IMG/VR virus record: IMGVR_UViG_3300023202_000383
Coordinates: 1-64,000 of that record
Strand: one strand, 5' to 3'
DNA length: 64,000 nt
Below the pieces are notes generated by a model. It was not told the DNA's origin. It did not search any database and saw nothing but the letters and a program-made list of their open reading frames with translations. Of this stretch, positions 17,945 to 38,628 are shown piece after piece. Position 1 is the stretch's first letter. Each line of letters opens with the position of its first letter. Made by a program: the position numbers and the translations under genes.

Positions 17945-18379
17945 TTACAGAAAATTCCCAAGATACTGACGGAGAAGAATAATAACGTCATCTCCGTTAA
18001 TCGATCTCAGTTCCAGATCTTGTATATCGTCGAAATCATGCTGGTGCGAGAATACCAAACCTGACATATTAAAAGACACATCTTTTTTAGTGGCAAATCT
18101 ATGTGCCGCATTGTTCGCATATATTGTTTGGTGCTCCCGATGAAAATCTAGATCAACCGACGTAATAATTATTTCATGTGTTATCAGTACCATCGGCGTC
18201 TTTATATATGGAACGTTAGCATGTTCGCTTATATATAAATCTGCGGCGGCAATTACAGTTCTTGGGACACCGGCCAGAGTGCTGATAGGACTGGAATCAA
18301 ACAAAGATGCTAATTCGTAGCTAGGCTTTATTCTGGTCAAGTGAGTATGAGAATCTATTCTCGGGTACGGTAACATCAA
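17945..18379 (-). CDS. hypothetical protein, last gene of the purZ operon
   Basis: Start overlaps the sulfotransferase stop codon. Confidence 0.55.
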   Translation of the reverse strand: MMLPYPRIDSHTHLTRIKPSYELASLFDSSPISTLAGVPRTVIAAADLYISEHANVPYIKTPMVLITHEIIITSVDLDFHREHQTIYANNAAHRFATKKDVSFNMSGLVFSHQHDFDDIQDLELRSINGDDVIILLRQYLGNFL

Positions 18380-18951
18380 GCTGGATATCCAAAGATCTCA
18401 AAATCCATGTCCAGTTTACTATAAGCCACTCGCTTTAAGTCGTCATCGTAATATTCGGACCAATGCTTGTGGTCTGTAGAATTGTGCTTATCTAATTTTA
18501 AATCAATCCCTATAGTCTTTACAATAGCGTTGAAATCCTCGTCTAGATTTTCGAATCGCCCAACAAAGTCAACGACTATTTTGCTTCTATCATCACATAT
18601 CCATCTTCTTTGTCTCCACCAATCTAGAGAATTATTTATTATAAAATCTTCGAATGTCTTGTACTTTTCCGTGAATTTAATGATATTTCTTTTATAATTG
18701 TATTCATAAGCAGACACTAAATGATCATACGGGTTCCTTACGAATGCGAATTTATAGTAATTTGCCCATTCCTCTGGAAATCTTCTCTTTATTTTCCGCC
18801 AAGTAACATGATGATAATCGTCGCTATCGATTTCGTCGTTTGGGACTATATCATTAGCTATATTGCCTTTTTTCATGGCAAATTTTATGCTAGTCCCAGC
18901 GGTCTTAGGGATATGGACAAATATGAACTTGTGTTTGTGCGAAATAATCAT
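18376..18951 (-). CDS. sulfotransferase family 2 protein
   Basis: FIFVHIPKTAGTS (5'-PSB), FAFVRNPYDHLVSAY (3'-PB), DFVGRFENL. Confidence 0.88.
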   Translation of the reverse strand: MIISHKHKFIFVHIPKTAGTSIKFAMKKGNIANDIVPNDEIDSDDYHHVTWRKIKRRFPEEWANYYKFAFVRNPYDHLVSAYEYNYKRNIIKFTEKYKTFEDFIINNSLDWWRQRRWICDDRSKIVVDFVGRFENLDEDFNAIVKTIGIDLKLDKHNSTDHKHWSEYYDDDLKRVAYSKLDMDFEIFGYPA

Positions 18952-20156
18952 ACGTTTGCGAACACCACACTATCCGTACTTGGCCCGTGACTCCAGAATG
19001 ATGCCTCAACTCTATCTGGCAGGCAATCAAGATTATGATGTCTTATGAAATCTTTCATCTTTTCGTCGCCATATCTTTTAGACCCAACATAATTTAAAAA
19101 CGTGAACGCCAAGTATATCTTAAATGGGTTTGGGGGCATATTTTTTATTATAAAATCTTCTAATGCGAGTGTCGAAAATCTCATAATACGCCTAGGTAAC
19201 TTGGTAAGTGTAGTCATTTCAACAGGCACATCATAGCCAGCGATTCTCGACACCTCTTCCCAAGTCAATTCCTCACTGTCTTTAAATATATCGCCACTAT
19301 ATGAATCTACTTCTTCATATTCCTTGCCTTCCGATTCATATATCTGCACTTCATCCCAAGTTAAGAACTTTCTAGACTCTTTGTCAAGATATCTCTTGCT
19401 ATTTATTCTAATTGGCATAGTTCTATTTACTCCAATAATGTTGCCAATCAGATTCGGCGGCAGGTCCATGTCTGACATAAGCCCACCCACTGTGGTAGCT
19501 CTACTTGTGCAGTTAGGGTAGAAATTGGAATATAACGACAAGAAATGGCCTTGACTACCGTCCATAAGTGCGGTCGAGCTACTTAATTCAATTATCATAT
19601 CCAAAGGATCATATATCATATCCTTTAATTCATCATAGTCTTTAGCAACCTTCGTCTTTCTTAAGGACTTCTTGGCTCTACATGCGCCGCTTCCGGACCC
19701 AGTTGTGCCGTGCTTGCTTGTGCCCTTATATGGGTCAACTTCATTGTATGGGTCGCCCTCGAAGTTTTTTACTCCATTCTCAAAATCTATGTCATCCTGC
19801 GTGACTATCCCGGCATTGGGGTGTATATGTACGTGCGTTTTGGGGATATTTAGATCATGCATTTCTTTCAAAAGATCGTCTATGACAAACGCAGAACCGG
19901 GGCCAATAACCGCATGCGGCTCATATGGGATACCGTTTGCTAGATAACCATAATAAAACATACCAGATGGTAGTATTTTGAAGACATATTTTGTTCCGGA
20001 ATCTCTTACGGTATGGCTAGCGTTTCTGCTATTAGCAGTCAAAAGATAACGGGGGCAATTATTTTTAGCTAAATACGCTGATATTAGGCCTTTAGATTCA
20101 GATCCAAATTGTGCACCAAGACAAATATTTACTTTGCCGTTCTCGAAAAAACTCAT
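18948..20156 (-). CDS. purZ: PurZ-type adenylosuccinate-synthetase homolog (2-aminoadenine pathway)
   Basis: AQFGSESKG (Ser at the PurA Asp13 position), NASHT, DGSQG..LSLY..FYP..TSR, RTMPIRI, TTLTKLPRR (Leu at the PurA Arg303 position), TFLNY. Confidence 0.85.
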   Translation of the reverse strand: MSFFENGKVNICLGAQFGSESKGLISAYLAKNNCPRYLLTANSRNASHTVRDSGTKYVFKILPSGMFYYGYLANGIPYEPHAVIGPGSAFVIDDLLKEMHDLNIPKTHVHIHPNAGIVTQDDIDFENGVKNFEGDPYNEVDPYKGTSKHGTTGSGSGACRAKKSLRKTKVAKDYDELKDMIYDPLDMIIELSSSTALMDGSQGHFLSLYSNFYPNCTSRATTVGGLMSDMDLPPNLIGNIIGVNRTMPIRINSKRYLDKESRKFLTWDEVQIYESEGKEYEEVDSYSGDIFKDSEELTWEEVSRIAGYDVPVEMTTLTKLPRRIMRFSTLALEDFIIKNMPPNPFKIYLAFTFLNYVGSKRYGDEKMKDFIRHHNLDCLPDRVEASFWSHGPSTDSVVFANV

Positions 20157-20979: not shown

Positions 20980-21314
20980 TAGCACAATGGAACAAATCTC
21001 CAATTGATGTATTCGGTACTCCCAACGGCTTTGATGCTTCAATATGCGGCTACTGTGAGGAGAAAAACGGAAGGTTCTATGTGTATATTGTACTTGAAAT
21101 AAACCAAAACAACTCTACATCATCGTATCTTCTTAAAGAAAATTCTAGAAAGATATTTGGACATGTTGATGTTGATAATATAGAGTCGCCGCACTTACAA
21201 AAGCAGATAGATAAGTTAAATGGAATATCTCATAAAGATTTAATAATAAAAGCCCAGCTATATGAATCAAAGGGTAAACTATTAGATGAAAATTGGAATA
21301 TTTTCAAAGTTTGA
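20976..21314 (+). CDS. hypothetical protein
   Basis: ATGA-coupled ORF. Confidence 0.65.
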   Translation: MIAQWNKSPIDVFGTPNGFDASICGYCEEKNGRFYVYIVLEINQNNSTSSYLLKENSRKIFGHVDVDNIESPHLQKQIDKLNGISHKDLIIKAQLYESKGKLLDENWNIFKV

Positions 21315-22362
21315 TATGGCTGGCGGTTCTGAATTCAGAGCCGCTGAAATGGCCAATGCGATAGCTAAATACAGCAATCACGAGTCTCTTATTCTGGCAG
21401 AGAAGCAAGTGCCAACCAGGATAAGAGACTATGTGAATAATAGTGTTAAAATAATTGAAAACGTAGTGCTACCCCAACCAAAGAACAAAGACGTTCTTTA
21501 TGAGGTAGATTCCCTTTTAGTCATCAATACTGATTCAAAAGATTTTACAACATTAGACTATTGGCAAGGCAAATCCACTAGGCATAGTGCTGTCATAGAT
21601 GTCTCTAAAATCAAGCAGATATGTTTTTTATTTAATTGGATAGTCAGCCCGTCTAGGCATCTATTCAAGCTTAATGAACTATCTGACATAAGAATAATCA
21701 CCACAAACGAGAAATTCTTTAAAGAAATAAGCGATCAAGACAGATATGAAATGGTAAGACATCTGCCTAGAACAATATTAAGAAGCCCAATAGATAATAC
21801 CAAATTCGACGACATCACAAGAAAACCATTAATCGATAGACCAATAAGAGTTGGAATGCATTCTAAATCCGTTGGGAACAAATGGAACAAAGAATTTAAA
21901 GACTTAATTAAGTACACAACAACCAAATATGGTAACAAAGTCCATTGGAAATTCATGGGAATGTCAAGAGAGCTAACTGAGTCTTTAAAACAAACCGATG
22001 GTAATATAACGATATCAAAAGAATTCGCAGAAGAAGTACCTCAGTTCCTATCTGATTTAGATATATTTACATTTTATATATCATGGTCCAGAGAAGAACC
22101 TTGGTCTAGAGCTTGTGCTGAGGCTATGGTTAGCGGATTGCCTGTCCTGGCGACCAACAAAGGTGGTAATAAAGATCAAATAGTGCATGGTAACAATGGA
22201 TTTTTATGTAAATCGCTACAAGATTTCAAAAATCACCTGACCGTCTTGATAGAGCACCCAGGAATTATATCAGATATGGCAAGAAATTCTAGGATATTGT
22301 CAAAGCAATTCCATAGCCAAGAAATAATCAGACAGTATATAAATTTTATAGATGCTCATTGA
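21286..22362 (+). CDS. glycosyltransferase family 4 (GT-B)
   Basis: AGGSE, REEPWSRACAEAMVSGLPVLATNKGG. Confidence 0.88.
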   Translation: MKIGIFSKFDMAGGSEFRAAEMANAIAKYSNHESLILAEKQVPTRIRDYVNNSVKIIENVVLPQPKNKDVLYEVDSLLVINTDSKDFTTLDYWQGKSTRHSAVIDVSKIKQICFLFNWIVSPSRHLFKLNELSDIRIITTNEKFFKEISDQDRYEMVRHLPRTILRSPIDNTKFDDITRKPLIDRPIRVGMHSKSVGNKWNKEFKDLIKYTTTKYGNKVHWKFMGMSRELTESLKQTDGNITISKEFAEEVPQFLSDLDIFTFYISWSREEPWSRACAEAMVSGLPVLATNKGGNKDQIVHGNNGFLCKSLQDFKNHLTVLIEHPGIISDMARNSRILSKQFHSQEIIRQYINFIDAH

Positions 22363-23143
22363 AAAAGAACAATATAAAGTATCCATGTGTACAACATGCA
22401 TGGATAGGCTATATACATTAAGAGAAACTCTTCCGAAGAACATAGAAGATAATGCTGACTATCCATTTGTCGAATTCGTTGTCTTAGATTACAATAGCAA
22501 AGATGGCTTGGGCGACTGGATAAAAGAAAATATGATGCCATTTATAGAATCTGGCATCGTCAGCTATTATAGAACAGAAGAGCCTCAATATTTTAGTATG
22601 TCACATTCAAGGAATATTGCTTTCAGAGTAGCATCTGGTGACATAGTAAATAATTTAGACGCTGACAACTTCACCAATCAAGGGTTTGCGTCCAGAATAA
22701 ATGAAATGGCACAACTGGGATCAAAGGATAGGGAAGTTGCATACCCAAACCCAGCAACAGAAGTAAATAAAGTCATGTTTGGTAAAGGCAAAAAGCTATT
22801 AAGAGGCAGATTGGGGTTCTTCAAGAGCGACTTCGTAAACCTTTTAGGTGGATATGACGAAGATCTGCAAGGATATGGTCACGACGATAGGGATTTGTAC
22901 AACAGAGCTATGAAACTTGAGTTTAATTTGTTGTGGTTTGGTGGCCAATATGTCGATAGAATAAAAACTTCCAGAGCCGAAAAAGTAGTAAATATGAAGA
23001 TAAAGGACTGGAAGAAGACAGAAAATATGAACAAAGAAGTAAGCAAGAAGAAAATAGACGCGGGTATATATAAAGCTAATCAGAATAGGCATTGGGGCAA
23101 AGCAACCCTAATAAAAAATTTCGATCAAGAAATACAAATATGA
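22352..23143 (+). CDS. glycosyltransferase family 2 / GT7-like
   Basis: SMCTTCMDRL, VVLDYNS, NLDADN, GGYDEDLQGYGHDD. Confidence 0.85.
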   Translation: MLIEKEQYKVSMCTTCMDRLYTLRETLPKNIEDNADYPFVEFVVLDYNSKDGLGDWIKENMMPFIESGIVSYYRTEEPQYFSMSHSRNIAFRVASGDIVNNLDADNFTNQGFASRINEMAQLGSKDREVAYPNPATEVNKVMFGKGKKLLRGRLGFFKSDFVNLLGGYDEDLQGYGHDDRDLYNRAMKLEFNLLWFGGQYVDRIKTSRAEKVVNMKIKDWKKTENMNKEVSKKKIDAGIYKANQNRHWGKATLIKNFDQEIQI

Positions 23144-23859
23144 GCAGAAGCATATCATTTTGCACCACAACCTTCAACAGGTTGGAGCATTTAAGCAAGA
23201 CTCTGCCATATAACATCAGAGATAATCGCCTATATTCTAAATTAGAATTAGTTATTCTTGACTGCGGATCTAAAGATGATACGCATAAATTCATGAGACA
23301 GTTCGAAAACCTTATGGAAGTCGGTAAGCTATCATATTATAAATTATTGTGGCCTGAAATCGAGTTCTTTGATGCAGCAAGAATGAAAAACATATGCCAT
23401 AAATTAGCAAATGGTGAATTACTGTGCAATTTAGATGTTGACCAATACTCTACAAAAGGGTTCGCAAGAAAATTAAATATATTGTGCAAGCATAAAAAGG
23501 ACAAATTCATAATAAGCAAAAATGGAAAATTGTGGGGAAAGTTGGCTGTCCTAAAGAAAGATTTCATCAAGATGCTTGGCGGATATGATGAATCAATGGA
23601 TGGTTATTGGTCTGATGATGAGGACTTATTTAATAGAGCTATTGCACAAGATTTTGAGCCAATAAGATTTAATAATGGGTTCAAAATGATTCACCACGAC
23701 AGATCAAGCAAATACTTCACATATGATCATGACAACAAAACCAAAAACAGGATAATATCTAATAAAAACATATTAGATCATAGATATAAAGCCAATATAG
23801 ATAGACAATGGGGCTGTGGAGTATTATTAAAAAACTTTCGTGAAGAAATCAAGATATGA
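23140..23859 (+). CDS. glycosyltransferase family 2 / GT7-like (tandem paralog)
   Basis: SFCTTTFNRL, ILDCGS, NLDVDQ, GGYDESMDGYWSDD. Confidence 0.85.
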   Translation: MSRSISFCTTTFNRLEHLSKTLPYNIRDNRLYSKLELVILDCGSKDDTHKFMRQFENLMEVGKLSYYKLLWPEIEFFDAARMKNICHKLANGELLCNLDVDQYSTKGFARKLNILCKHKKDKFIISKNGKLWGKLAVLKKDFIKMLGGYDESMDGYWSDDEDLFNRAIAQDFEPIRFNNGFKMIHHDRSSKYFTYDHDNKTKNRIISNKNILDHRYKANIDRQWGCGVLLKNFREEIKI

Positions 23860-24741: not shown

Positions 24742-24845
24742 AAAGTAGCAAAGTAGCAAAGTAGCAAAGTAGCAAAGTAGCAAAGTAGCAAAGTAGCAAA
24801 GTAGCAAAATAACACCAGAGCAAAATAACACCAGAGCAAAATAAC
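24742..24845. repeat. 8-bp-period array: (AAAGTAGC)x8 then (AAAATAACACCAGAGC)x2 plus a partial unit
   Basis: Read directly from sequence; intergenic. Confidence 0.95.
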
Positions 24846-24854
24846 AAGATTTGT

Positions 24855-25305
24855 AGATGGGAATCTCATATTGTCGGATCTGGTCCAGGCGAGATATGAG
24901 ATTGACTTTCCATCAGATTAATCCAGATCCCGCAAAGGTAGAGAACTACCTTCAGCGAAAATCCGATTGCTGAGAGAGCGCCCGGTAGGCTATTTCACCG
25001 GTCTAAGCCTACCATTCACCTTGGATAACCATTGGGTTACATGGCAAAAATGCAACAAGCAAAGCACAGTAACTCCCAGGAGAACACCCGCAGTCTCCGG
25101 CTCCGGGCCTAGCTATATCGGTTGGCACCCTGGGGATTAGAAACCAGGCTCTGTCATTACTAAATACCTACGCTGCTAGAAGCAGTGGGCAAAAGGGCCG
25201 AAATCGGGAAGGTTCCTGTCCATGGCAGCGTGAGAGTCAGACGTGATTAAAAAAGAAAAAGATGTTTCTCTCTTCGATTTTTCTTCTTCTTTTTTTTAAT
25301 CATCA
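24855..25305. ncRNA. candidate structured non-coding element (ncRNA or origin)
   Basis: No ORF of 60 aa or more; GC-enriched; several perfect inverted repeats (AATCTCATAT/ATATGAGATT, GGATCTGG/CCAGATCC, GGTAG/CTACC, GGTAGGCT/AGCCTACC, TAACC/GGTTA). Confidence 0.45.
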
Positions 25306-25363
25306 TGATCTCTCCAAGGTAAGGGAAACCGGACTATTTATAAATTATCAAATATAAAACGAC

Positions 25364-25585
25364 ATGTTTAAATGGCTTTTCGGCAGCAAGAAGCAAGAAA
25401 TGCATATCCATGTACATGTGGATGGTATTTTGAATGTTCAAGGTCAGGATTTAAAGCTTGGCATAAATTCGGATGCAGATATAAGCAACAATAAACAGGA
25501 TCCAAAAGAATCACACATACCTGAAATGGACCCGACAATTGGAGAAATTGACTTACCGCAGGTAGAATTTGGCGAAGAGGACTAA
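25364..25585 (+). CDS. small acidic protein with N-terminal amphipathic helix
   Basis: MFKWLFG start; preceded by the CAAATATA motif. Confidence 0.6.
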   Translation: MFKWLFGSKKQEMHIHVHVDGILNVQGQDLKLGINSDADISNNKQDPKESHIPEMDPTIGEIDLPQVEFGEED

Positions 25586-25586
25586 A

Positions 25587-26615
25587 ATGATTAAAATAGG
25601 ATTAGATCTTGGCACAAAGACAATCGTTTCTGCTAAAAGAGGCGAAGAAAACAAGCCTATATTCAAGCATGAAATAAATGGGTTTTATGAATTCCCGACA
25701 CCAGATAGCTTTACAAAAAAGCTGTTGGTTGGTCAGAAAATACCATTTGTTGAGAAGGATGGCAAGATATATGCTCTTGGCCGGAAGGCTGAGCAGTTTG
25801 CATATGCTGTCAATTCTACTCTTCGTAGACCGATGGCTGATGGTACAGTTAGCAAAGAGGAAGAAGCCATTAATATTATGGCATCGATTGTCCATGCTAT
25901 AATTGGCAAGTTAGATGATGATGCAATATTGTACTATTGTATCCCAGCAGACGCTATAAATAAGAGCACAAATGTGCAGTTCCACCAGAAGATTGCACAG
26001 ATGATAATTGATCGGTATCAAAGAAGTAAAGTAACTGTCAAGGGTTATCCTATCAATGAAGCCAGAGCGTTAGCTATAGGTTCTGGTGAGCCGGTTTGTA
26101 TTGCTGTGTCATTTGGTGCTGGTATGGTCAATGTTTGTTATTGCATGTACGGCATGTCAGTGTTTGAATTCAGTTTAGTTGGTAGCGGAGACCGGGTTGA
26201 TGCGGAGGCTGCTAGGCAGTTTGGATATGATCCAGAAAATCCAAATAAGAGCAGTCGCGAAACGCCGACAACCATGTGTAAGAGAAAGCACCAAATAGAT
26301 CTGACAAAATCTAAAGATGAAGTAGATAGAAAAGACCAGGCGATAATGATTTCGTATCAGATTCTGATAGAGAATGTTGTTGACGGTATTATAAAGGGTT
26401 TCAACGAAAACGAAGAAAAAGCCAAGATAGATCAGGCAATCCCTGTTGTAATAGCTGGTGGTACTTCATCTCCTCCGGGGTTCGGCGAATATTTTGAGGA
26501 GATTATGAAGTCTAAAGAACCCCCGTTTGAAATATCCACTATAACGGTACATCCTAGACCATTATATGCTGTTGCGGAAGGTTGTCTTATCGCTTCTGAG
26601 AGTCATGAGGAATAA
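25587..26615 (+). CDS. actin-fold ATPase (MreB/MamK/ParM superfamily)
   Basis: GLDLGT (phosphate 1), NEARA (connect 1), SFGAG (phosphate 2), IAGGTS (adenosine), PLYAVAEG (connect 2). Confidence 0.85.
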   Translation: MIKIGLDLGTKTIVSAKRGEENKPIFKHEINGFYEFPTPDSFTKKLLVGQKIPFVEKDGKIYALGRKAEQFAYAVNSTLRRPMADGTVSKEEEAINIMASIVHAIIGKLDDDAILYYCIPADAINKSTNVQFHQKIAQMIIDRYQRSKVTVKGYPINEARALAIGSGEPVCIAVSFGAGMVNVCYCMYGMSVFEFSLVGSGDRVDAEAARQFGYDPENPNKSSRETPTTMCKRKHQIDLTKSKDEVDRKDQAIMISYQILIENVVDGIIKGFNENEEKAKIDQAIPVVIAGGTSSPPGFGEYFEEIMKSKEPPFEISTITVHPRPLYAVAEGCLIASESHEE

Positions 26616-26640
26616 AATCAAAATTAAGTAGGAGGCAATT

Positions 26641-26883
26641 ATGGCACATCATGTAGTAGGTATAGGTCTATTTTCAGTTGCCAGAGATGGCACTGTTATG
26701 CCTGGAAAAGAAGGTACGATAGCTCAGGTTGCTACTTCTAATCTAGAAAGAAGAATTGTACCAACTAAAGGTGTAGATAGCTCAATGAATTATCCCACAA
26801 TAGTTGAATATCTAGATTTAGAAGAAGATGCTGGCTTTGATCTGGTTCATATAGACCAATATACTATAATAACTAAGGGCTAA
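26641..26883 (+). CDS. hypothetical protein
   Basis: AGGAGG RBS. Confidence 0.7.
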   Translation: MAHHVVGIGLFSVARDGTVMPGKEGTIAQVATSNLERRIVPTKGVDSSMNYPTIVEYLDLEEDAGFDLVHIDQYTIITKG

Positions 26884-26884
26884 A

Positions 26885-27310
26885 ATGCCGAGAAAGAGCC
26901 TAGAAGACAGGCTATGTGAAGCGTTATTAAGTCATTCGTCAAAAGACAATGACCAGTTTGATGAATATGTTGAAGATATCAAAGATCTCATGGGGTCATC
27001 TGGAGTTCTAGAAGAAGGCAAAAAGATAACTGTTACTACTATAATAGATACTGATGAAGATGAAGAAAAGATAGATCCTCAGGTAAAATTAAATATCCCA
27101 GATGAAGCAAAAAACAATTTCATGAACAAGGCTCAGGAATTGGGAAATTTTGATAGTCCTGCTTGGGTTGAGCAAGTTGTCAATGGTCTAAAGCAAGCGG
27201 GGGTTCAAGGAATGAACCCTATTGAGGATGATGAAAAGCCTGTAACTAAGAAAGAGATCATGTATCTAATATCTATGCTGATTGATCTCATAAAAACAGG
27301 AAAAGTATAA
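26885..27310 (+). CDS. hypothetical acidic protein
   Basis: Operon-packed ORF. Confidence 0.7.
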   Translation: MPRKSLEDRLCEALLSHSSKDNDQFDEYVEDIKDLMGSSGVLEEGKKITVTTIIDTDEDEEKIDPQVKLNIPDEAKNNFMNKAQELGNFDSPAWVEQVVNGLKQAGVQGMNPIEDDEKPVTKKEIMYLISMLIDLIKTGKV

Positions 27311-27915
27311 TGGCGCTAGAAGGTAAGGGACTAAACCTTAAAGGCGACAACACTTTCAAACCAGTTACCCCAGGCGTTAGAGTCACAGATATAGTTGTTA
27401 GAGGTGGCGGGGGAACGGTAACATTCTCTGATGGTGTTACTGTAGAATATTTATTTCAATTTATACAAGATCCCAGTATACCGTCTGGCGGTATCTTCGA
27501 TGTCACTCTGCAGGGCGATAGAGCTAAGAGAACGTATGAAAATGTGATATCTCAAGCTGTTTGTGATATGGTTGATTGGGTGACTCAGTGTTCCAGTCTC
27601 AATAGGCGAGTTTCTGAATTAGAAAAGTTACTTGGTAGAGGTGTTGAATTTACGTTCGAGATTGAGGATTGGGACGATCTTGGTGTAAAGAATCAGATCC
27701 ACATTATAAATGAAGGAACTCCTGGGCCTGGAGAAATTGGTCCACATGAATTAGGTACTTCTAGATCATTCCATATATCTGTTTGGAAAAGGGATGGGTC
27801 CCCTGCGATATTCGGCGTAGATACTGAATTCGAAATCAATTTAGATACTGGATTAATCAAACTTATTAAAGCTCCTTTAGGTAAGCCATTTGCTGGCAGG
27901 GTTATTGTAAGTTGA
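27310..27915 (+). CDS. putative virion/fibre protein
   Basis: C-terminal PGPGEIGPHEL...FAGRVIV module shared with 28294..28992. Confidence 0.55.
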   Translation: MALEGKGLNLKGDNTFKPVTPGVRVTDIVVRGGGGTVTFSDGVTVEYLFQFIQDPSIPSGGIFDVTLQGDRAKRTYENVISQAVCDMVDWVTQCSSLNRRVSELEKLLGRGVEFTFEIEDWDDLGVKNQIHIINEGTPGPGEIGPHELGTSRSFHISVWKRDGSPAIFGVDTEFEINLDTGLIKLIKAPLGKPFAGRVIVS

Positions 27916-28293: not shown

Positions 28294-28992
28294 ATGTCTA
28301 AAACTTTTTATGAAGCAATTATCGCGCAGGGTGGCTTTGCTGGGCAGGTATTTGATGTTGCTGCTGGTCCTGCCAACACCGATGTGATTGATGCTCTTTT
28401 GAGTGCCAGCGATGGTGTTCTTACGGAGAATGCTCCAGTCAATATGATATCAACCGGTGCTCTCTCTGCTGGAGCTGGTACTGATGGTATTGTTGACCTT
28501 GATATTACTGCGTTGGAGCAGGAAGGTCGCTGGTTCTGGCTTTCTGTTAGAAACAGTGATATCGGAACAATTAGCTTAACTGTTACTTCTACCACAGATA
28601 TTAATGGTGGCGGTGCCACCTTAACTATCAGTAGTGCTCAGGACCTGTTGTTTGTTCATGAATCTGGAGGCACTTGGAGAGCTTATCGCCAAGAACTTAG
28701 CACAGCCCCAACAAATGCTAAGATTTTCCGCGATACATTTGCTGCTAGTGATTGGTCTGGTGGGCCTACTAACTCTATTACAGTAATACAAACTGGCGCT
28801 CCTGGTGCTGGTGAAATCGGGCCTCATGGATTAGCTATTGCTAGTTCTTATGCTGTTCAGGTATATCGAGATTCAGACGATGAGCTTGTGGATCTTGGTA
28901 CAGTAGTAGATGGTGGCACCGGTGATATCACCTTGACTAAAACTGGCCTTGGTACTAATTTTGATGGTCGTGTGATTGTCGTTGGTGACTAA
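28294..28992 (+). CDS. putative virion/fibre protein
   Basis: G/T/A-rich beta-type sequence; PGAGEIGPHGL...FDGRVIV module. Confidence 0.6.
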   Translation: MSKTFYEAIIAQGGFAGQVFDVAAGPANTDVIDALLSASDGVLTENAPVNMISTGALSAGAGTDGIVDLDITALEQEGRWFWLSVRNSDIGTISLTVTSTTDINGGGATLTISSAQDLLFVHESGGTWRAYRQELSTAPTNAKIFRDTFAASDWSGGPTNSITVIQTGAPGAGEIGPHGLAIASSYAVQVYRDSDDELVDLGTVVDGGTGDITLTKTGLGTNFDGRVIVVGD

Positions 28993-29232: not shown

Positions 29233-29991
29233 ATGGCTAGAGAGTTCTTTGATACTGTTGCTACTAAAGCTGGTTTGGCTGGCGAATATGAAGAACTAAT
29301 TGAGTCTGAATTCGCCGCCTCGGCTGGACCAGCGTATACGCCCGGCGAAGATGGAATTTTTAGGGTAGTTGCCTCTAGGACAATTCAGTTATTGAAGGGT
29401 AGTCCAATCTATGTGGAGACTTTTCAGGACTCTGCTGCCACCCTACGAGTTCCGTCTGGGCTAATAGCAAGCAATGATGCCAACGATGGTAGATTTTATT
29501 TTGTCAAGAACAGCGGAATTGGGAATGTTGCATTACAAGATCACTTAGGTGGATCTTTGGCGGCAATCCGTAAAGGTCAATTTGTTGTTGCCCTACATGG
29601 AGATGATGATAATTGGGATGCTTCTGGGTTGCTTAGTTCCGACGCCGTCGTCGAAGTCAAGAACACGTTGACGACCACGGACACACTGCTGAACACGATC
29701 GCCACGATCGACGTCGACCCCAGCACCGTACACCATCTGGACGTGACGATCACGGCGCGGGAGGGCGACAATAATAGAGGGTCGTTCGTGCGTAAGGCCA
29801 CGATTTACCGTAATTCGACGGGCGGGGCAGCAATCGAGAATAACGTAATCGTGGTATTTGACGAGAGCAGCAGCGGTAACTTTAAGATAGCTGTCGTGGC
29901 GAGCGGCAACAGCATACTCATTCAGGTTCAGGATGAGCAGGGGCAAACGGTGAACTGGACCAGTTGGCACAAACTCTACTCACAGGCGTGA
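29233..29991 (+). CDS. putative fibre/structural protein, chimeric (AT-rich 5' half, GC-rich 3' half)
   Basis: Codon composition switches abruptly near 29640 with no break in frame. Confidence 0.65.
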   Translation: MAREFFDTVATKAGLAGEYEELIESEFAASAGPAYTPGEDGIFRVVASRTIQLLKGSPIYVETFQDSAATLRVPSGLIASNDANDGRFYFVKNSGIGNVALQDHLGGSLAAIRKGQFVVALHGDDDNWDASGLLSSDAVVEVKNTLTTTDTLLNTIATIDVDPSTVHHLDVTITAREGDNNRGSFVRKATIYRNSTGGAAIENNVIVVFDESSSGNFKIAVVASGNSILIQVQDEQGQTVNWTSWHKLYSQA

Positions 29992-29992
29992 C

Positions 29993-30634
29993 ATGATTAC
30001 CGGCATCACACAATTCGGGTTGGAGGGGCGTGTAGCAACGGTGGATCACGACCCGGCTATCGTGTCGACCGATGTCCCCGCAGGTTCGATTATCCTGTCG
30101 ACCTCCACAGGATTGCTCTACCGAAAACTCACCGGCGGCAGCAACACGGATGTGTTGCCGATGACCGCTTCCAGTCAGCCGTTCGATTGGGACAGCGGGG
30201 CGTCGGCGGTCGCGGCGGTCGTCGCGGCCGGGATGCTGTCGCTCGAATTGCTTGCCGATACCGACTCGAAGGTAGTCGGCGGCGACGTTGCCCCGCTGCA
30301 CGTCGACCTCGATCAGGCGTTGGAGCTTGACGTCAAGATCGTCACCCTCAGCTTGGGCGACGCGTCGGCCGACGCGCACCTGCGGCTGACGGCCCGCTAC
30401 GTGGGGTTGGGCGAGGCGGCGGACAAGACGCCCGACGAGACGATCGACCACATCTTTGAAGTCGCCAACGTAGATAAGTGCGTGCACGCCGTGACGTTCA
30501 CACTGGACCCGTCGCTTATCTCCCCCGAAGACCTGCTAAACCTGGAGCTGTCGCGGCTGGGCACGTCAGCGAGTGACGTGTTTACCGGCTCCATCGGCGT
30601 TGCCGAGAGGTCGCTGCTGAGGTTCTTTAACTGA
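29993..30634 (+). CDS. putative structural (beta-rich) protein in GC island
   Basis: Coupled to neighbours; high GC3. Confidence 0.65.
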   Translation: MITGITQFGLEGRVATVDHDPAIVSTDVPAGSIILSTSTGLLYRKLTGGSNTDVLPMTASSQPFDWDSGASAVAAVVAAGMLSLELLADTDSKVVGGDVAPLHVDLDQALELDVKIVTLSLGDASADAHLRLTARYVGLGEAADKTPDETIDHIFEVANVDKCVHAVTFTLDPSLISPEDLLNLELSRLGTSASDVFTGSIGVAERSLLRFFN

Positions 30635-31164
30635 TGGCAAGCACGTACGAACTGATACTGTTCCGCGAGGAGACCCGAGACGACGGGAAGGTGGCGTTGC
30701 TGCGTATCCCGTTGGTGGCCGGTGCGGGGATCGACCTCGACGCGGTGATCGGGGAGGTATCCGCCGGTAGCGGTGTGAGCGTGCAGGAGGGATACGCCGA
30801 GAGCGAAGGGACCAGTTCGACGACCAGCACCAACTTTCAGCAAAAGCTCCGCGCCAGCTTGACGGGTCTAGACGCCGGTACGTATGAGGTGGCGTGGTCT
30901 TGTGAGGTGTTGCCCGGCAAAAACAATCTGGCTGCCCGCGTGCGGGTTCAAGTGGATGACACGACGACGCTAAACAGCCCTGACCCGGTCCTCAATCGAG
31001 ACAATAGCGGGGGCAACGTGAAGGGCTGGATGCCTCTCAGTGGGTTCCGTCAATTGGCATTGAGCGCCGGGGATCATGACTTCGACATCGACTTTGCTTC
31101 ACCTCAGAACGGAAAGTCAGTAGATATCCGGTTTGCGCGTATCAAAATAGCGAGGACAAATTAA
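30634..31164 (+). CDS. putative structural/fibre-tip protein in GC island
   Basis: TGATG coupling; beta-sandwich-like composition. Confidence 0.65.
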   Translation: MASTYELILFREETRDDGKVALLRIPLVAGAGIDLDAVIGEVSAGSGVSVQEGYAESEGTSSTTSTNFQQKLRASLTGLDAGTYEVAWSCEVLPGKNNLAARVRVQVDDTTTLNSPDPVLNRDNSGGNVKGWMPLSGFRQLALSAGDHDFDIDFASPQNGKSVDIRFARIKIARTN

Positions 31165-32106
31165 GTGGCCGAGCAAGCATACACGTACAGCATCGCCAGC
31201 GACTTCCCGTCGGGCGCGGTCAACACGCAGAAGCTGCACGACGAGGTCGTGGCCGACACGGCGATCACGACGCAGCTCGACCGCATCGACACCGACGGCG
31301 ACGGCTTGTCAATCGTGTTTCAGGCGGCGCTGTCGGCGGCGGAGAAGACGGCGCTGGACGGCGACACGACCGGACCGGCCGGGGGGCTGATCGCGCAGCA
31401 CGACAACAGCGCGTCCGCCCCCGACTACGGGAAGATGCAGATCGACGGGATCTCCCCGGACGCCAACGGCTCGCTGCCGCAGGCCCCGATCATCTCCACG
31501 CCGGGCCACCGGCTCAACGACCGCGACGTGCTGGTGCGGGTGGGCGAGTTCGACAACCCGTTCGAGGACCTGCGGGTCAACCCCGACGACAACAAGGAAG
31601 TGGCGTGGGGCGAGGTCACGTGCGACCCGGCCGACACCGATCCGGCGAACAAGACCGGGGTATTCAAGCTCGACGGCAACGGCGACTGGGTCCGCTGCAC
31701 CGACCAGACCGACGCGGCCGCCAACGCCGGGCTCACGGTCCTGGAGTACCAGGCCCGGCAGGGCGGCGTGGCCGGGGGCGATGCGCTCAAGTACGACGTG
31801 CGGGGCGGGACGCTGTGGGTCGACTCCAACGTGCCGGACGACGGCGACCGCTGGTCGCACCGCGTCTATTCGGTCGGTGCCCCGGACCTGTCGGCCGTCC
31901 TCGGCGGCCGGGTGCCGTTCTTCGACGGTTACCTGTTTCCCTATCGCAACAACTGGATGCAGACGCTCAATCCCGTGGCGTTCCCGATGGATCCGTCGGC
32001 GTCGGCGGCGGCGAGCATCGTCCGCGTGTGGTTCTATTACAAGGCGGGCACGGCGTACGAGCACGTGCTGCGGTTCCACCTGTACCGACCGACCGGAAGC
32101 TGGTAG
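31165..32106 (+). CDS. putative structural protein in GC island
   Basis: GTG start directly after the upstream stop; very high GC3. Confidence 0.7.
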   Translation: MAEQAYTYSIASDFPSGAVNTQKLHDEVVADTAITTQLDRIDTDGDGLSIVFQAALSAAEKTALDGDTTGPAGGLIAQHDNSASAPDYGKMQIDGISPDANGSLPQAPIISTPGHRLNDRDVLVRVGEFDNPFEDLRVNPDDNKEVAWGEVTCDPADTDPANKTGVFKLDGNGDWVRCTDQTDAAANAGLTVLEYQARQGGVAGGDALKYDVRGGTLWVDSNVPDDGDRWSHRVYSVGAPDLSAVLGGRVPFFDGYLFPYRNNWMQTLNPVAFPMDPSASAAASIVRVWFYYKAGTAYEHVLRFHLYRPTGSW

Positions 32107-35327: not shown

Positions 35328-35397
35328 AATAAAATATCTTTGATTACAGATAGATCCTCTGCATTGCGTGTTGTATTTTATATACATGGTTGACATA

Positions 35398-36747
35398 ATG
35401 AAATATAATGGTCCTACAGACTTTGCTCATCTTCATGTCCATACTTTATATAGTACGCTTGATGGGGTTCAATCTCCAGAAGAATTGTTTTCTACGTGCA
35501 AAGAAAGAGGATGGAGTGCGTTAGCCGTAACCGAGCATGGGACATTGGCATCAGTCCCAGACAATTATGCGGCTGCAAAAGAATACGGCGTAAAGTATAT
35601 AGTTGCTTGCGAAATTTATTACAATGATTATGAACCGACTAGGCAAGATCTTGTTAAAGAAGATGTTAAAATTCGCAAGCTAAAAGAAACCGACCCTAAT
35701 TTTTATTATAAAATGTCTAGAAATAGGCATTTAACAGTCCTTGCTAAAAACGATAAGGGTGTGGAGAACATAATAAAATTGACCACTCAAGCGTGGGAGA
35801 CTGGATTTTATTATAGGCCGAGGATATGGTTTGATAAATTAGATGAATATAGAGAGGGTTTATTGGTATTGAGTGGATGTTTAAATGGGCCTGTTTCTCA
35901 TGAGTTAAGACATGGGAATTTAAGGTCTGATGATATGAGAGGTGCATTAGACTATATACATAAATTCAAAGAAGTATTTGGCGATGATTATTTTGTAGAA
36001 TTGCAGATGCCTTGTCTTCCTGATTTTCCTGACCACAAAGTCTTCCGTGCATTAAATCATATAGCTAACAAGTACAATATACCGAAAGTTCTTACAAATG
36101 ACGCACATTATCTAAATCGTGAAGACTTTGAAATCCAGAAATTAATGATGGCTATATCCCAGGGTTTAACTGTTGATGATCCGAATCTGTTCCATGTAAA
36201 TAGTGATGAGCAATATCTTAAAACCAGAGCAGATCTATGGCACACATTTAAGACTGGGAAAGACGGCAAATATTGTGAATATGTGACTGATAGCGAATTT
36301 GAAGATATGTGCAACAACACATTGGTAGTTGCCGGTAAATGTGATAATTTCGAACCTGATTTGTCGTCGAAGGTTCCTACATTAGATAATGACGAGCAGA
36401 TCTTAAGAACCCTTGTGTACGATAGGCTTAAGCAAGAGGGATTCGATAAAGATGAAACTAAGTACAATATAGACAATAAAGAAGTTACTTATAGAGAACA
36501 AGCCGACATAGAATTGAATAGGTTTATTGAGAAGAATTTCGCCAGCTATTTCTTGATAACCAGAGATTTGGTGCAGTATAGTTTAGATAACGGTTGGCCT
36601 GTTGGACCGCGAGGTTCAGTTGGCGGCAGTCTAGTGTGTTATTTATTGGGCATAACCGAGTTGGATCCAATAAAATGGAATTTATCGTTTAACAGGTTTT
36701 TAAGCCCCTCGCGCGGAGGAAAGATGCTAAACATTAAGGCAGAATAG
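35398..36747 (+). CDS. dnaE: DNA polymerase III alpha, fragment 1 (PHP domain + N-terminal palm)
   Basis: HLHVHTLYSTLDG, TEHG, NDAHY, YFLIT, GPRGSVGGSLV, RFLSPSR, then stop. Confidence 0.9.
   Translation: MKYNGPTDFAHLHVHTLYSTLDGVQSPEELFSTCKERGWSALAVTEHGTLASVPDNYAAAKEYGVKYIVACEIYYNDYEPTRQDLVKEDVKIRKLKETDPNFYYKMSRNRHLTVLAKNDKGVENIIKLTTQAWETGFYYRPRIWFDKLDEYREGLLVLSGCLNGPVSHELRHGNLRSDDMRGALDYIHKFKEVFGDDYFVELQMPCLPDFPDHKVFRALNHIANKYNIPKVLTNDAHYLNREDFEIQKLMMAISQGLTVDDPNLFHVNSDEQYLKTRADLWHTFKTGKDGKYCEYVTDSEFEDMCNNTLVVAGKCDNFEPDLSSKVPTLDNDEQILRTLVYDRLKQEGFDKDETKYNIDNKEVTYREQADIELNRFIEKNFASYFLITRDLVQYSLDNGWPVGPRGSVGGSLVCYLLGITELDPIKWNLSFNRFLSPSRGGKMLNIKAE
36728..36746 (+). repeat. direct repeat flanking the inserted endonuclease gene (partner at 38604-38628)
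   Basis: TAAACATTAAGGCAGAATA here; the partner reads TAAACATTAAG-ATTAAG-GCAGAATA. Confidence 0.85.
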
Positions 36748-36777
36748 GTCTAATTCAGTTATAAGCAAATATATAAT

Positions 36778-38613
36778 ATGATAAATGTACAACGAAGCAA
36801 AGAAGTGTTTGGATTAAAAAGCATCAATAGGATTCCTAAAAAACAGAAAGTTATATGTAATTGTGATGTTTGTGGGGTTGAATCACGTATTACTAAGCAG
36901 CACCATTATATATGCAGCAAACGTGCTGGTTTATATAGATGTAAAGATTGTGGTAGAAAAGCCATGGCATCTAAAGTATCAAAAGCCATGATATCAAAAT
37001 GGCAAAACGACAAATACAAATCCAAGCAGATTGGCAGGACTCATAGCGATGAATTAAAGGAATATGCTAGGCAGAGAGCTATCAAATTGTGGAAAGATAA
37101 AGAATATGTGGCAAAGTATAATGCTGGGTTTGACCCGGCCAAGGCTAGAAAGAATCTAAAGGCCACCAGATCGGTTGCCAATAAAGCTGCATCGCTTGCT
37201 ATGGCTGATAAATGGCAGGAAAAAGAATATCGCAGTAAAATGTCAGATCAATCAGCTAAGCTATGGAGTAACGATTGTTATAGAAACAAAGTAATAAGTA
37301 GCCTCAAAAAACATTATTCGTCATTAGAAGTTTTAGATAGATGTTCAAATAGAGCGAAAAAATTGTGGAAGAATAATGATTATAGGGATAGGTGGTTCAA
37401 ATCATTTATGCAATCATTTGGCAATGAAAGGTTACACGAAATTTCATTACAAAGTGCCAAGAATTGGGGAGACCGAGAATATAGAGATAAAATAGAATCA
37501 CAATGGGACGATCAAAAACGTGCAGAAATGTCCGAAATATGTAAAGAATGGTGGACTGATGATAGGAGAGCTGAAGTTTCTGAGATTATGATAAGTAGGT
37601 GGTCGGACCCTAATTTTAGAAAGAAAACAATAAAAGCATTTATTGATTCATGGACTGAAGAACGCAGGCAGGCTGCTAAAGATTCATGGACTGAAGAACG
37701 CAGGCAGGCTGCGTCTGATAGATCCAGGAATTTGTGGAAAGATCCGAAATATGTTAGCAAGATGGTTGATATGATCGGGAGGCCGTCGTCTTTAGAAATT
37801 CAATTCGCCAGCTTATTGGATGATTATGGCATCGAGTACACGCAACAGTTCCATTTAGGGCCATATTTATTTGATTTTAAGGTCAACGATGTCTTAATAG
37901 AAATTAATGGCGATTATTGGCATAGATTGCCGAAGACAATATCAAAAGACAAGGCTAAAGCTACTTATGTTGAAAAACATTATCAGCAATATCAGCTTAA
38001 GTATTTATGGGAGCATGAATTTTATCAATTAGAAAAGATTAATAAATTTATTGAATTCAGTTTTGTTGGTTCTGACGTAGAAGAGGTTGATTTTTCAGAA
38101 TTAAAATTTGTTACTGATATAGATTATGATTCAATAAAATCGTTAATTGAGAAATATCATTATAAAGGAAGTATTGGTCGGGGTGGGGTGTATTATGGTG
38201 TTATATATCGTGGTAATTTGATCGCTGGGTCTGTTGTTGGGTCACCAACTAGGAATGTTGTTGGTGGCGAGTTGTTACGATTTGTTATACACCCACAGTA
38301 TCAGGTCAAGAATCTTGCATCGTGGTTTTTGAGTAGAATCTCAAAGCATGCTTTGAGAGATTATGATTTATTGTTTACATTTGCTGATCCGAATTTTAAC
38401 AATTACGGCACAATATATGAGGCTAGCGGCTGGGAATTTGCTGGCGAAACAAAATCAGATTATTGGTATGTTAGCGAAGACGGTTGGGTTATGCATAAAA
38501 AGACTTTATGGAATAGAGCAAAGAATTTATGTATGTCAGAAAGGTATTTTGCTGAGGTTTTTGGATATAATCGGGTATATGGGTTGCCAAAGAGAAAGTA
38601 TATTAAACATTAA
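36778..38613 (+). CDS. free-standing endonuclease: helical W-repeats + DUF559/Vsr-like nuclease + Mom-like GNAT domain
   Basis: PSSLE...FDFKVNDVLIEINGDYWH; ELLRF...NLASWFLS...TFADPNFNNYGTIYEASGW. Confidence 0.8.
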   Translation: MINVQRSKEVFGLKSINRIPKKQKVICNCDVCGVESRITKQHHYICSKRAGLYRCKDCGRKAMASKVSKAMISKWQNDKYKSKQIGRTHSDELKEYARQRAIKLWKDKEYVAKYNAGFDPAKARKNLKATRSVANKAASLAMADKWQEKEYRSKMSDQSAKLWSNDCYRNKVISSLKKHYSSLEVLDRCSNRAKKLWKNNDYRDRWFKSFMQSFGNERLHEISLQSAKNWGDREYRDKIESQWDDQKRAEMSEICKEWWTDDRRAEVSEIMISRWSDPNFRKKTIKAFIDSWTEERRQAAKDSWTEERRQAASDRSRNLWKDPKYVSKMVDMIGRPSSLEIQFASLLDDYGIEYTQQFHLGPYLFDFKVNDVLIEINGDYWHRLPKTISKDKAKATYVEKHYQQYQLKYLWEHEFYQLEKINKFIEFSFVGSDVEEVDFSELKFVTDIDYDSIKSLIEKYHYKGSIGRGGVYYGVIYRGNLIAGSVVGSPTRNVVGGELLRFVIHPQYQVKNLASWFLSRISKHALRDYDLLFTFADPNFNNYGTIYEASGWEFAGETKSDYWYVSEDGWVMHKKTLWNRAKNLCMSERYFAEVFGYNRVYGLPKRKYIKH

Positions 38614-38628
38614 GATTAAGGCAGAATA

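What the first reader, a model, noticed from the sequence alone, without database searches (positions are those of the whole stretch)
25364..26615. Phage actin-like ATPase paired with an amphipathic-helix peptide
Seen: all five actin-fold motifs are intact, and the gene is preceded by a 73-aa protein starting MFKWLFG with an acidic tail. Known: jumbo-phage cytoskeletons characterised so far are mostly tubulin (PhuZ), while actin-type ParM/AlfA systems use an adaptor and centromere repeats. Inference: a membrane-anchored actin filament system for positioning phage DNA or capsids.
Basis: inference. Interest (0 to 1): 0.65.

Follow-up and report, generated by a model that had tools for sequence, protein, structure and literature searches.

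The report
Huge-phage actin with membrane-tether partner
A jumbo bacteriophage encodes an actin-like filament protein of the archaeal "volactin" family, always paired with a tiny, disordered protein that looks like a membrane tether; the pair recurs in hundreds of large phages and appears to be undescribed.

Summary
Both ORFs exist and are real genes. The 342-aa protein (25587-26615, +) is a full-length member of Pfam Volactin (PF25216, 167.7 bits against a cut-off of 35). Its model is a confident actin fold, and it is 32-33% identical to haloarchaeal volactin orthologues. It is not MreB, ParM or salactin.

The 73-aa ORF (25364-25585, +) ends 1 nt before the actin ATG. It belongs to an unannotated family of about 400 proteins.
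- 35 of 46 non-redundant viral loci carry such an ORF directly upstream of the actin gene.
- 4 of 4 homologues found from the peptide side sit 0-9 nt upstream of a Volactin gene.
- No other neighbouring gene is conserved.

The peptide is predicted to be disordered. It has an invariant C-terminal FG motif and a variable N-terminus: a short hydrophobic-basic segment here, and a true transmembrane helix in close relatives.

Best reading: a membrane-tethered actin filament module, parallel to haloarchaeal volactin and its adjacent 4-TM CdpA-like protein. Binding, polymerisation and the cargo were not tested.

Centromere-like repeats lie upstream in this window but are not conserved in relatives. 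Glycosyltransferase genes recur just upstream of the pair.

I rate this a new variant of a known kind.

The parts
25364..25585 (+). Gene for a 73-aa partner protein, predicted disordered and acidic. It belongs to a family of about 400 unannotated proteins.
   Evidence: ORF. Homologous ORFs lie directly upstream of the actin gene in 35 of 46 non-redundant viral loci. The profile search found 398 proteins of 71-103 aa with no Pfam domain, and 4 of 4 looked up lie 0-9 nt before a Volactin gene. AF2 alone gives pLDDT 59 and no secondary structure. No Pfam, PHROG, NCBIfam or PADLOC hit.
25364..25393 (+). N-terminal hydrophobic-basic segment MFKWLFGSKK, a putative membrane-targeting sequence.
   Evidence: The same type occurs in L005, L087, L008, L010, L011 and L031. 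It is replaced by a transmembrane helix (Kyte-Doolittle 19-mer 2.5-3.3) in L006, L009, L012, L013, L015, L016, L025 and L057. The helical moment of the window's own copy is low, 0.27. The membrane role is inferred.
25397..25441 (+). Alternating hydrophobic/polar stretch EMHIHVHVDGILNVQ (amphipathic beta-like pattern).
   Evidence: Aligned with ITLDLNINxN and NININVRV in relatives. The 180-degree hydrophobic moment is 0.78-1.11. It is absent from most transmembrane-type homologues.
25517..25582 (+). C-terminal bipartite motif: IPEM, a spacer, then VEFG and EED. Proposed actin-binding end.
   Evidence: F69 and G70 are the only invariant columns among 28 partner proteins, and P(D/E)F lies about 10-15 residues before them. 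This block has the highest pLDDT in the peptide model, 75 for residues 61-70. Binding is inferred, not shown.
25575..25581 (+). Shine-Dalgarno-like AAGAGGA for the actin gene, inside the end of the partner gene. The partner's stop is at 25583-25585 and the actin ATG is at 25587.
   Evidence: Read directly from the sequence. The 1-nt gap suggests translational coupling (inference).
25587..26615 (+). Gene for a 342-aa actin-like ATPase of the Volactin family.
   Evidence: PF25216, E 5.9e-49, 167.7 bits against cut-off 35, profile positions 2-320 of 321. AF2 pLDDT 91, pTM 0.89. Foldseek hits: MreB 4czi E 4.7e-14, MamK TM 0.72, BeeR TM 0.74, eukaryotic actins. 32-33% identity over 99% of its length to haloarchaeal orthologues, E 1e-44. 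265 word-search homologues and 223 IMG/VR loci.
25599..25619 (+). Phosphate-1 motif GLDLGTK.
   Evidence: G5, D7, G9 and T10 are invariant across all clades.
26103..26135 (+). Phosphate-2 motif AVSFGAGMVNV, with Ser in place of the usual Asp.
   Evidence: S175, G177 and G179 are invariant. The same SFGAGM occurs in haloarchaeal volactins. The Ser aligns with Asp of EutJ.
26445..26483 (+). Adenosine motif VVIAGGTSSPPGF.
   Evidence: G291, G292, T293, G298 and F299 are invariant.
24742..24846 (.). Tandem repeats (AAAGTAGC) x8.4 and (AGCAAAATAACACCAG) x2.8, about 520-620 nt upstream of the pair. Whether they belong to the module is doubtful.
   Evidence: TRF and pattern search: 8 matches against 0.06 expected. 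No comparable arrays recur upstream in relatives. A similar A-rich 8-mer array lies at 54085-54135. Short-read contigs break inside it.

Best explanation
This is a two-gene cytoskeletal module of a jumbo bacteriophage. The 342-aa Volactin-family actin-like ATPase polymerises into filaments. The 73-aa protein encoded immediately upstream, and probably translationally coupled, is an intrinsically disordered tether. Its N-terminal hydrophobic-basic segment sits on the cytoplasmic membrane, its acidic linker spans the gap, and its C-terminal P(D/E)x...hydrophobic-x-F-G motif binds the actin. Filaments are thereby attached to the membrane of the infected cell.

Shown: family membership, actin fold, reality of the small gene, and exclusive, reciprocal and widespread linkage of the two genes.

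Inferred: polymerisation (by homology with volactin, which forms dynamic filaments in vivo), membrane binding, the peptide-actin contact, and the purpose.

The cargo is open. The recurrent glycosyltransferase genes just upstream make a scaffold for membrane-associated glycan-modifying enzymes as plausible as the positioning of DNA or capsids.
For: Phage context: the record is a 256.5-kb virus with bacterial-type RecA, DnaB, split DnaE and a gp32-like protein.

Actin:
- PF25216 at 167.7 bits; AF2 pLDDT 91; fold matches to MreB, MamK, BeeR and actin.
- 32-33% identity to haloarchaeal volactin orthologues.
- Volactin forms dynamic filaments whose tips touch the membrane (PMC10869688).

Linkage:
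- An upstream FG-ORF in 35 of 46 non-redundant loci, against 54 of 570 background ORFs.
- No other neighbour of the window is conserved.
- 398 partner homologues; 4 of 4 sampled lie 0-9 nt upstream of a Volactin gene.
- The partner's stop is 1 nt from the actin ATG.

Anchor: within one actin subclade (48-55% identity to the window), the partner's N-terminus is either MFxW(L/F)-type (window, L005, L087, L010, L011) or a transmembrane helix (L006, L009), while the C-terminal VxFGEE motif stays the same.

Disorder: the peptide model has pLDDT 59, with the best block at the C-terminal motif.

Analogy: 64 of 75 haloarchaeal volactin loci have an upstream 4-TM protein (DUF7139) with an acidic linker and an invariant WGG motif. 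This is the CdpA-like HVO_2016, already noted beside volactin in PMC12126565.
Against: - No experiment supports any step.
- The largest partner clade (MAQLIKPxxVKI...) has no recognisable membrane anchor.
- The window's own N-terminus has a low helical hydrophobic moment.
- 11 of 46 loci lack a recognisable partner, including two close relatives, L004 and L007.
- The phage partner is not detectably homologous to the haloarchaeal CdpA-like protein (hhalign E 0.86), so the parallel is one of architecture only.
- The Asp-to-Ser change in phosphate 2 leaves ATPase competence unproven.
Confidence: 0.55

Rival explanations
1. A ParMRC/AlpAC-like DNA-positioning system. The small protein would be a DNA-binding adaptor that recognises the tandem repeats upstream (24742-24846) and couples phage DNA to growing actin filaments.
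For: The order repeats - small gene - actin gene matches alpS-alpA-alpC of prophage CGP3, where AlpA binds upstream repeats and AlpC filaments (PMC4446434). The repeats are far beyond chance.
Against: - The small protein is acidic (15 D/E against 6 K/R) and predicted disordered, with no DNA-binding domain found.
- Homologues carry transmembrane helices.
- Repeats are not a recurrent feature upstream of the pair in 47 relatives.
- A similar A-rich 8-mer array precedes an unrelated gene at 54.1 kb.
- About 400 nt of ORF-free, structured-looking sequence separate the repeats from the gene.
Confidence: 0.1
2. The pair is a membrane scaffold for envelope or virion glycosylation. Tethered filaments would organise the phage's own glycosyltransferases at the inner membrane, in the way MreB with RodZ organises wall synthesis. 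This is a sub-case of the best explanation with a specific cargo.
For: Among the immediate upstream neighbours of the pair in 44 non-redundant loci, 13 hit GT9, 11 GT2, 3 MptE-like, 1 a sulfotransferase and 1 a pyruvyl transferase. Among the 44 downstream neighbours only 3 hit GT2 and 2 a sulfotransferase. Different enzyme families occur in different clades. The window has GT1, GT2 and GT2 at 21286-23859.
Against: Adjacency alone is weak evidence. Loci within a clade are not independent. Several loci, such as L005, L006 and L010, show no recognised glycosyltransferase as upstream neighbour. No interaction was tested.
Confidence: 0.2
3. The small protein is a regulator of the filament (nucleator, capper or inhibitor), or a mimic of a host peptide such as the FtsZ C-terminal IPxF-type tail that targets host division proteins. 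It would not be a tether.
For: It is a disordered protein with short linear motifs. The W-x-I-P-D-F element of the large clade resembles, from my memory only, the FtsZ C-terminal peptide bound by the actin-fold protein FtsA. The large clade lacks an anchor.
Against: The IPxF resemblance covers four residues and was not tested. The swap between hydrophobic segment and transmembrane helix argues that membrane location is the selected property, at least in the window's clade.
Confidence: 0.1
4. The actin-fold protein is not cytoskeletal but acts as a non-polymerising ATPase (chaperone-like or kinase-like), and the small ORF is an unrelated conserved leader peptide.
For: Phosphate 2 lacks the usual Asp. 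Viral fold matches include Hsp70 homologues.
Against: The best fold matches are filament-forming actins (MreB, MamK, BeeR, actin) over the whole length. The protein is a member of the family of volactin, which polymerises in vivo. The same Ser occurs in haloarchaeal volactins.
Confidence: 0.05

Closest known systems
Volactin (HVO_2015) of Haloferax volcanii with the adjacent CdpA-like 4-TM protein HVO_2016
   Same: Same Pfam family (PF25216). 32-33% identity over the full length to haloarchaeal orthologues, and the same SFGAGM phosphate-2 motif. Both have a co-directional upstream gene for a membrane-anchored protein with an acidic disordered region and an aromatic-Gly motif.
   Different: The host is a bacteriophage, not an archaeon. 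The partner is 70-140 aa with one short anchor, instead of about 300 aa with four TM helices (DUF7139) and a C-terminal amphipathic helix. No detectable homology between the partners (hhalign E 0.86). Volactin's role is the rod-to-disk shape change.
MreB (N-terminal amphipathic helix in Gram-negatives; the bitopic partner RodZ)
   Same: Closest solved folds (4czi E 4.7e-14, TM 0.65-0.69). The concept of an actin filament held on the inner membrane by a short helix or a bitopic partner (my own knowledge).
   Different: No PF06723 hit at E <= 0.1 and 17-19% identity. Here the anchor is on a separate small protein, not on the actin. No RodZ-like HTH.
AlpC/AlpA of Corynebacterium prophage CGP3
   Same: A phage-borne actin-like protein with a small co-transcribed partner encoded upstream and DNA repeats upstream of the operon.
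   Different: AlpA binds DNA. The partner here is acidic, disordered and membrane-anchored in relatives, and the repeats are not conserved. Sequence relationship to AlpC was not tested.
ParMRC, AlfAB and Alp7AR plasmid partition systems
   Same: An actin-like ATPase with a small partner whose C-terminal end would engage the filament (my own knowledge).
   Different: The partner gene lies downstream in those systems and encodes a DNA-binding adaptor. Here no conserved downstream gene and no conserved centromere was found. At E <= 0.1 only Volactin matched in Pfam.
PhuZ tubulin spindle of nucleus-forming jumbo phages
   Same: A cytoskeletal polymer encoded by a jumbo phage.
   Different: A different superfamily. 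No tubulin (PF00091) in the 256.5-kb record, which is only about 70% complete.

Membership tests
Volactin family (Pfam PF25216) | Match to the family HMM above the gathering score, over the full length | tested here: met
   167.7 bits against cut-off 35, profile positions 2-320 of 321. The same result came from the six-frame search of the record.
Volactin family (Pfam PF25216) | Direct sequence similarity to haloarchaeal volactin orthologues | tested here: met
   tblastn 31.5-32.7% identity over 99% of the query, E 1e-39 to 1e-44. 34% identity in the alignment, with shared SFGAGM, PINE and GGTSSPxGF blocks. The set includes Haloferax loci.
Volactin family (Pfam PF25216) | Dynamic filaments in vivo that touch the membrane at their tips | not testable with these tools
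   Known for HVO_2015 only (PMC10869688).
Volactin family (Pfam PF25216) | Adjacent upstream CdpA-like/DUF7139 membrane protein | tested here: not met
   Present in 64 of 75 haloarchaeal loci. The phage partner has no DUF7139 hit and no profile similarity. Only the architecture is analogous.
MreB/Mbl (PF06723) | HMM match | tested here: not met
   No hit at E <= 0.1 for the window protein. Only 'faint' precomputed hits in some homologues.
MreB/Mbl (PF06723) | Actin fold with four subdomains | tested here: met
   Foldseek TM 0.60-0.70 to MreB structures. This feature is shared by all actin-like proteins.
ParM-type (type II) partition system | Downstream DNA-binding adaptor and centromeric repeats conserved with the ATPase | tested here: not met
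   No downstream gene of the window is conserved in relatives. Repeats are present in the window but not conserved. The partner lies upstream and is acidic and disordered.
Salactin (NCBIfam NF053533) | HMM score above the cut-off | tested here: not met
   21.1 bits against cut-off 400.
AlpAC (prophage CGP3) | The adaptor binds repeats upstream of the operon | not testable with these tools
   The gene order is the same. DNA binding by the 73-aa protein is unlikely from its composition, but it was not assayed.
PhuZ/TubZ phage tubulins | Tubulin/FtsZ GTPase domain | tested here: not met
   No PF00091 match in the record. The protein has an actin fold.

The most novel reading that the evidence does not exclude
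Volactin-family actins in both haloarchaea and huge bacteriophages may share one working principle. A disordered tether protein encoded directly upstream would hold filament ends at the membrane through a short hydrophobic-x-aromatic-Gly motif (VEFG or INFG in phages, LSWGG in haloarchaea). The phage version would be a minimal 70-100-aa tether. In phages, this tethered filament would organise the neighbouring glycosyltransferases, giving a virus-encoded, MreB-like scaffold for glycan modification.
Probability: 0.2. Interest if true: 0.8.

Novelty: new variant of a known kind. Interest (0 to 1): 0.62.

Why it matters
The phage cytoskeletons studied so far are PhuZ/TubZ tubulins and a few ParM- or Alp-type actins that move DNA. 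Here a different actin lineage, known experimentally only from one haloarchaeon, turns out to be widespread in large uncultivated phages. There are 223 IMG/VR loci, many on contigs of 100-400 kb. It comes with a dedicated small partner that no database names.

If the partner tethers filaments to the membrane, this would be a minimal and experimentally easy actin-plus-anchor pair: 342 + 73 aa, expressible in E. coli. It would also give a concrete candidate class for the 'unknown volactin-binding factors' and the tip-anchoring seen in Haloferax. The link with glycosyltransferase genes points to an unexplored role for a viral cytoskeleton.

Tried and rejected
- Complex prediction of actin plus peptide gave no verdict (ipSAE 0.17 and 0.02, mark 0.32). 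This is neither support nor evidence against binding.
- AF2 of the peptide alone gave no fold (pLDDT 59).
- hhalign of the phage partner against haloarchaeal CdpA-like proteins was not significant (E 0.86). The only stretch it aligned was VxFGK on LSWGGVE.
- The peptide has no hit in PHROGs, PADLOC, NCBIfam or Pfam, and the actin has none in PHROGs or PADLOC. The protein atlas gave nothing usable for the peptide.
- Fusion reading: the longer 'fused' homologues (370-434 aa) are mostly gene-caller extensions in another frame over the partner gene. A programmed frameshift is not needed, because L087 has its own ATG for a genuine N-terminal extension.
- Centromere idea: repeats are not conserved.
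- The upstream ORF-free region at 24850-25250 has no Rfam match at gathering or at E <= 1, and no sequence conservation in relatives.
- Searches that found nothing: the single-protein scan of viral contigs, the scan of genome contigs with phage-derived patterns and megablast of 20 kb against phage records.
- No RNA run holds the stretch, so expression is untested.
- Promoter and terminator scans were uninformative.
No alternative genetic code was used.

Full report
**Context.** The window is the first 64 kb of a 256.5-kb IMG/VR virus record, estimated about 70% complete. It has 35-40% GC. It carries a bacterial-type RecA with an intein, a DnaB-like helicase, a DnaE polymerase split into pieces, a gp32-like protein, a Mom-like protein and several glycosyltransferases. 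It is therefore a jumbo tailed phage of a bacterium. No tubulin gene is present in the record.

**Observation.** Both ORFs exist as described.
- The 73-aa ORF (25364-25585) starts MFKWLFGSKK and ends in an acidic tail.
- The actin-like ORF most likely starts at the ATG at 25587 and not at the TTG at 25569. An AAGAGGA site lies 5 nt upstream, and the partner's TAA ends 1 nt before the ATG.
- The stretch 24779-26700 is letter-identical in contigs from a second sample of the same study.

**The actin-like protein.**
- Family: at E <= 0.1 it matches a single Pfam family, Volactin (PF25216), with 167.7 bits against a cut-off of 35 and over the whole profile. It has no PHROG or PADLOC match. It scores only 21 bits, against a cut-off of 400, on NCBIfam salactin.
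- Fold: an AlphaFold2 model built on 30 homologues is confident (pLDDT 91, pTM 0.89). Its best solved-structure matches are MreB, MamK, BeeR and eukaryotic actins, at 13-19% identity. By sequence alone, no solved structure matches better than E 0.008.
- Haloarchaeal relatives: tblastn against plasmids found proteins at 31.5-32.7% identity over 99% of the length. A genome scan seeded with them returned 238 relatives. The top 80 are all Halobacteria and include several Haloferax species, so these are the volactin orthologues.
- Motifs: all five actin-fold motifs are in place. However, phosphate 2 reads SFGAGM, with an invariant Ser where EutJ has Asp in the alignment shown. From my own knowledge, not shown here, MreB, ParM and actin also have Asp there. 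The haloarchaeal proteins share this Ser.
- Known biology: volactin itself forms dynamic filaments in vivo that span the cytoplasm and touch the membrane with their tips. Its binding factors are unknown (PMC10869688).

**Distribution.** The word search gave 265 homologues, all PF25216 and many on contigs of 125-397 kb. A profile scan of IMG/VR gave 223 loci. Two GenBank 'uncultured phage' genomes of 595 and 485 kb also carry it. Patterns derived from the phage proteins found no relative among representative genomes of 185,579 species.

**The small gene is real and linked to the actin gene.**
- In the fetched loci, the ORF directly upstream of the actin gene is a homologue of the window's peptide.
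- After collapsing loci at 90% actin identity, 35 of 46 have an upstream small ORF with FG near its C-terminus, against 54 of 570 other small ORFs in the same loci.
- In a 28-sequence alignment, the only invariant columns are F69 and G70. A P(D/E)F element lies 10-15 residues before them, and an alternating hydrophobic/polar stretch lies in the first half.
- None of the window's other neighbouring genes is conserved in these loci, so the conserved unit is the pair.
- From the peptide side, a profile search found 398 proteins of 71-103 aa, with no Pfam domain and no informative name. All four that I looked up lie 0-9 nt upstream of a Volactin gene.

**What the partner looks like.** It is predicted to be disordered (pLDDT 59, no secondary structure). 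The most confident block is at the C-terminal motif. Its N-terminus varies in an informative way.
- In the window and in L005, L087, L008, L010, L011 and L031 it is a short aromatic/hydrophobic segment followed by basic residues.
- In L006 and L009, whose actins are about 50% identical to the window's and whose partners keep the same VxFGE(E/D) end, it is a clear transmembrane helix. The same holds in a more distant clade (L012, L013, L015, L016, L025, L057).
- Exchanging a peripheral membrane segment for a transmembrane helix, while the C-terminal motif stays, is the best evidence here that membrane attachment is the selected property.
- Two cautions apply. The helical hydrophobic moment of the window's own N-terminus is low (0.27). 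The largest clade (MAQLIKPxxVKI...) shows no obvious anchor.

**The haloarchaeal parallel.**
- In 64 of 75 haloarchaeal volactin loci, the gene directly upstream encodes a protein of about 300 aa. It has four TM helices (Pfam DUF7139), an acidic linker with an invariant W-G-G inside a well-conserved L-S-W-G-G-V-E block, and a C-terminal amphipathic end.
- This is the CdpA-like protein HVO_2016. The CdpA paper mentions it as lying next to volactin and as hinting at a common anchoring function. CdpA itself anchors the FtsZ2 ring (PMC12126565).
- The architecture (anchor, disordered acidic linker, short aromatic-Gly motif, directly upstream of the actin gene) is thus the same in both domains.
- The proteins are not detectably homologous (hhalign E 0.86).

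**Mechanism.** I commit to a membrane-tethered actin filament module (confidence 0.55). The actin polymerises, and the partner binds it through the C-terminal motif and holds it at the membrane through its N-terminus. Polymerisation, binding and membrane association are all inferences. The one complex prediction allowed gave no verdict.

**The ParMRC/AlpAC-like reading.** This is the main rival, because perfect tandem repeats lie 520-620 nt upstream, as in alpS-alpA-alpC. Four points count against it:
- the partner is acidic and disordered;
- its homologues have TM helices;
- repeats are not conserved upstream in relatives;
- a similar A-rich 8-mer array precedes an unrelated gene at 54.1 kb.

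**An unexpected association.** The gene just upstream of the pair is very often a glycan-modifying enzyme.
- Of 44 non-redundant upstream neighbours, 13 hit GT9, 11 GT2, 3 MptE-like, 1 a sulfotransferase and 1 a pyruvyl transferase.
- Of the 44 downstream neighbours, 3 hit GT2 and 2 hit sulfotransferase families.
- The enzyme family differs by clade: GT9 recurs beside partners of the anchor-less type, GT2/MptE beside TM-type loci such as L012 and L016, and a sulfotransferase in L008. The window has GT1, GT2 and GT2 at 21286-23859.
- This suggests, but does not show, that the filament organises membrane-associated glycosylation rather than DNA or capsids.
- In the large clade, a coiled-coil protein of about 150 aa follows the actin gene in 8 loci.

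**Novelty and verdict.**
- Searches for volactin, phage-encoded actin, actin-like proteins in huge or jumbo phages, and MreB in huge phages found no description of this phage clade or of the partner family.
- Phage actins as such are known (AlpC), and the actin belongs to a named family, so this is not categorically new. I rate it a new variant of a known kind: a phage-borne Volactin lineage with a novel, dedicated, probably membrane-anchoring partner.
- Interest is 0.62. Specialists in phage and archaeal cell biology would find it surprising and easy to test.

Noticed in passing
window 24742-24846 and 54085-54135: Perfect tandem arrays of A-rich 8-mers lie in intergenic DNA: (AAAGTAGC) x8.4 followed by a 16-mer x2.8, and (AAAAGAGC)n upstream of ORF 54163. 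Short-read contigs of three runs break inside the first array, so its copy number is uncertain.
   Followed up: partly
window 24850-25250: An ORF-free stretch of about 400 nt with 48-54% GC in a 37% GC genome. The RNA fold z-score is -2.7. It has no Rfam match and no sequence conservation in relatives, so it may be an unclassified structured RNA. L004 has a comparable GC-rich, ORF-free 750 nt in front of its actin gene, in place of the partner gene.
   Followed up: partly
window 18948-20156 (-), with 18376-18951 (-): An adenylosuccinate-synthetase homologue whose best match is PurZ (NF038379, 147.6 bits, below the cut-off of 300; also phrog_1211). This hints at a 2-aminoadenine (Z-base) pathway. 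It lies next to a sulfotransferase gene. No DatZ or MazZ was sought.
   Followed up: partly
window 29700-32100: An island of 54-71% GC in a genome of about 38% GC. It holds three co-directional ORFs (29993-30634, 30634-31164, 31165-32106) without any Pfam or PHROG match. It lies downstream of ORFs 27310-27915 and 28294-28992, which share a GPGEIGPH motif.
   Followed up: partly
window 35368-43071 and 47576-52110: The DnaE polymerase is split into at least three ORFs, interrupted by a 611-aa Mom-like/homing-endonuclease ORF (36778-38613). RecA carries an intein with a LAGLIDADG endonuclease. The DnaB-like helicase shows an intein remnant.
   Followed up: no
L012-L030 (about 2500-3000) and L005/L087 (about 3180-3265 and 2501-2615): Some clades of the phage actin carry conserved in-frame N-terminal extensions. 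In the clade at about 40% identity, an extension of roughly 100-130 aa ends in YQVYRLGDVFTGRRV. In the L005/L087 subclade, an extension of about 30 aa contains GLEE(L/I)DFDxxF. The window's gene has neither, because a stop lies directly upstream.
   Followed up: partly
L032, L034, L042, L048, L066, L072 and others, about 4020-4490; also L174 and L175: In the large anchor-less clade, a coiled-coil protein of about 150 aa (weak LidA_Long_CC hits, 8 loci) is encoded directly after the actin gene. It may be a third component there. It is not present in the window.
   Followed up: no
L044, L051, L052, L082 (upstream of the actin gene): GIY-YIG-like homing-endonuclease ORFs are inserted between the partner's position and the actin gene, or in place of the partner, in a few loci.
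   Followed up: no
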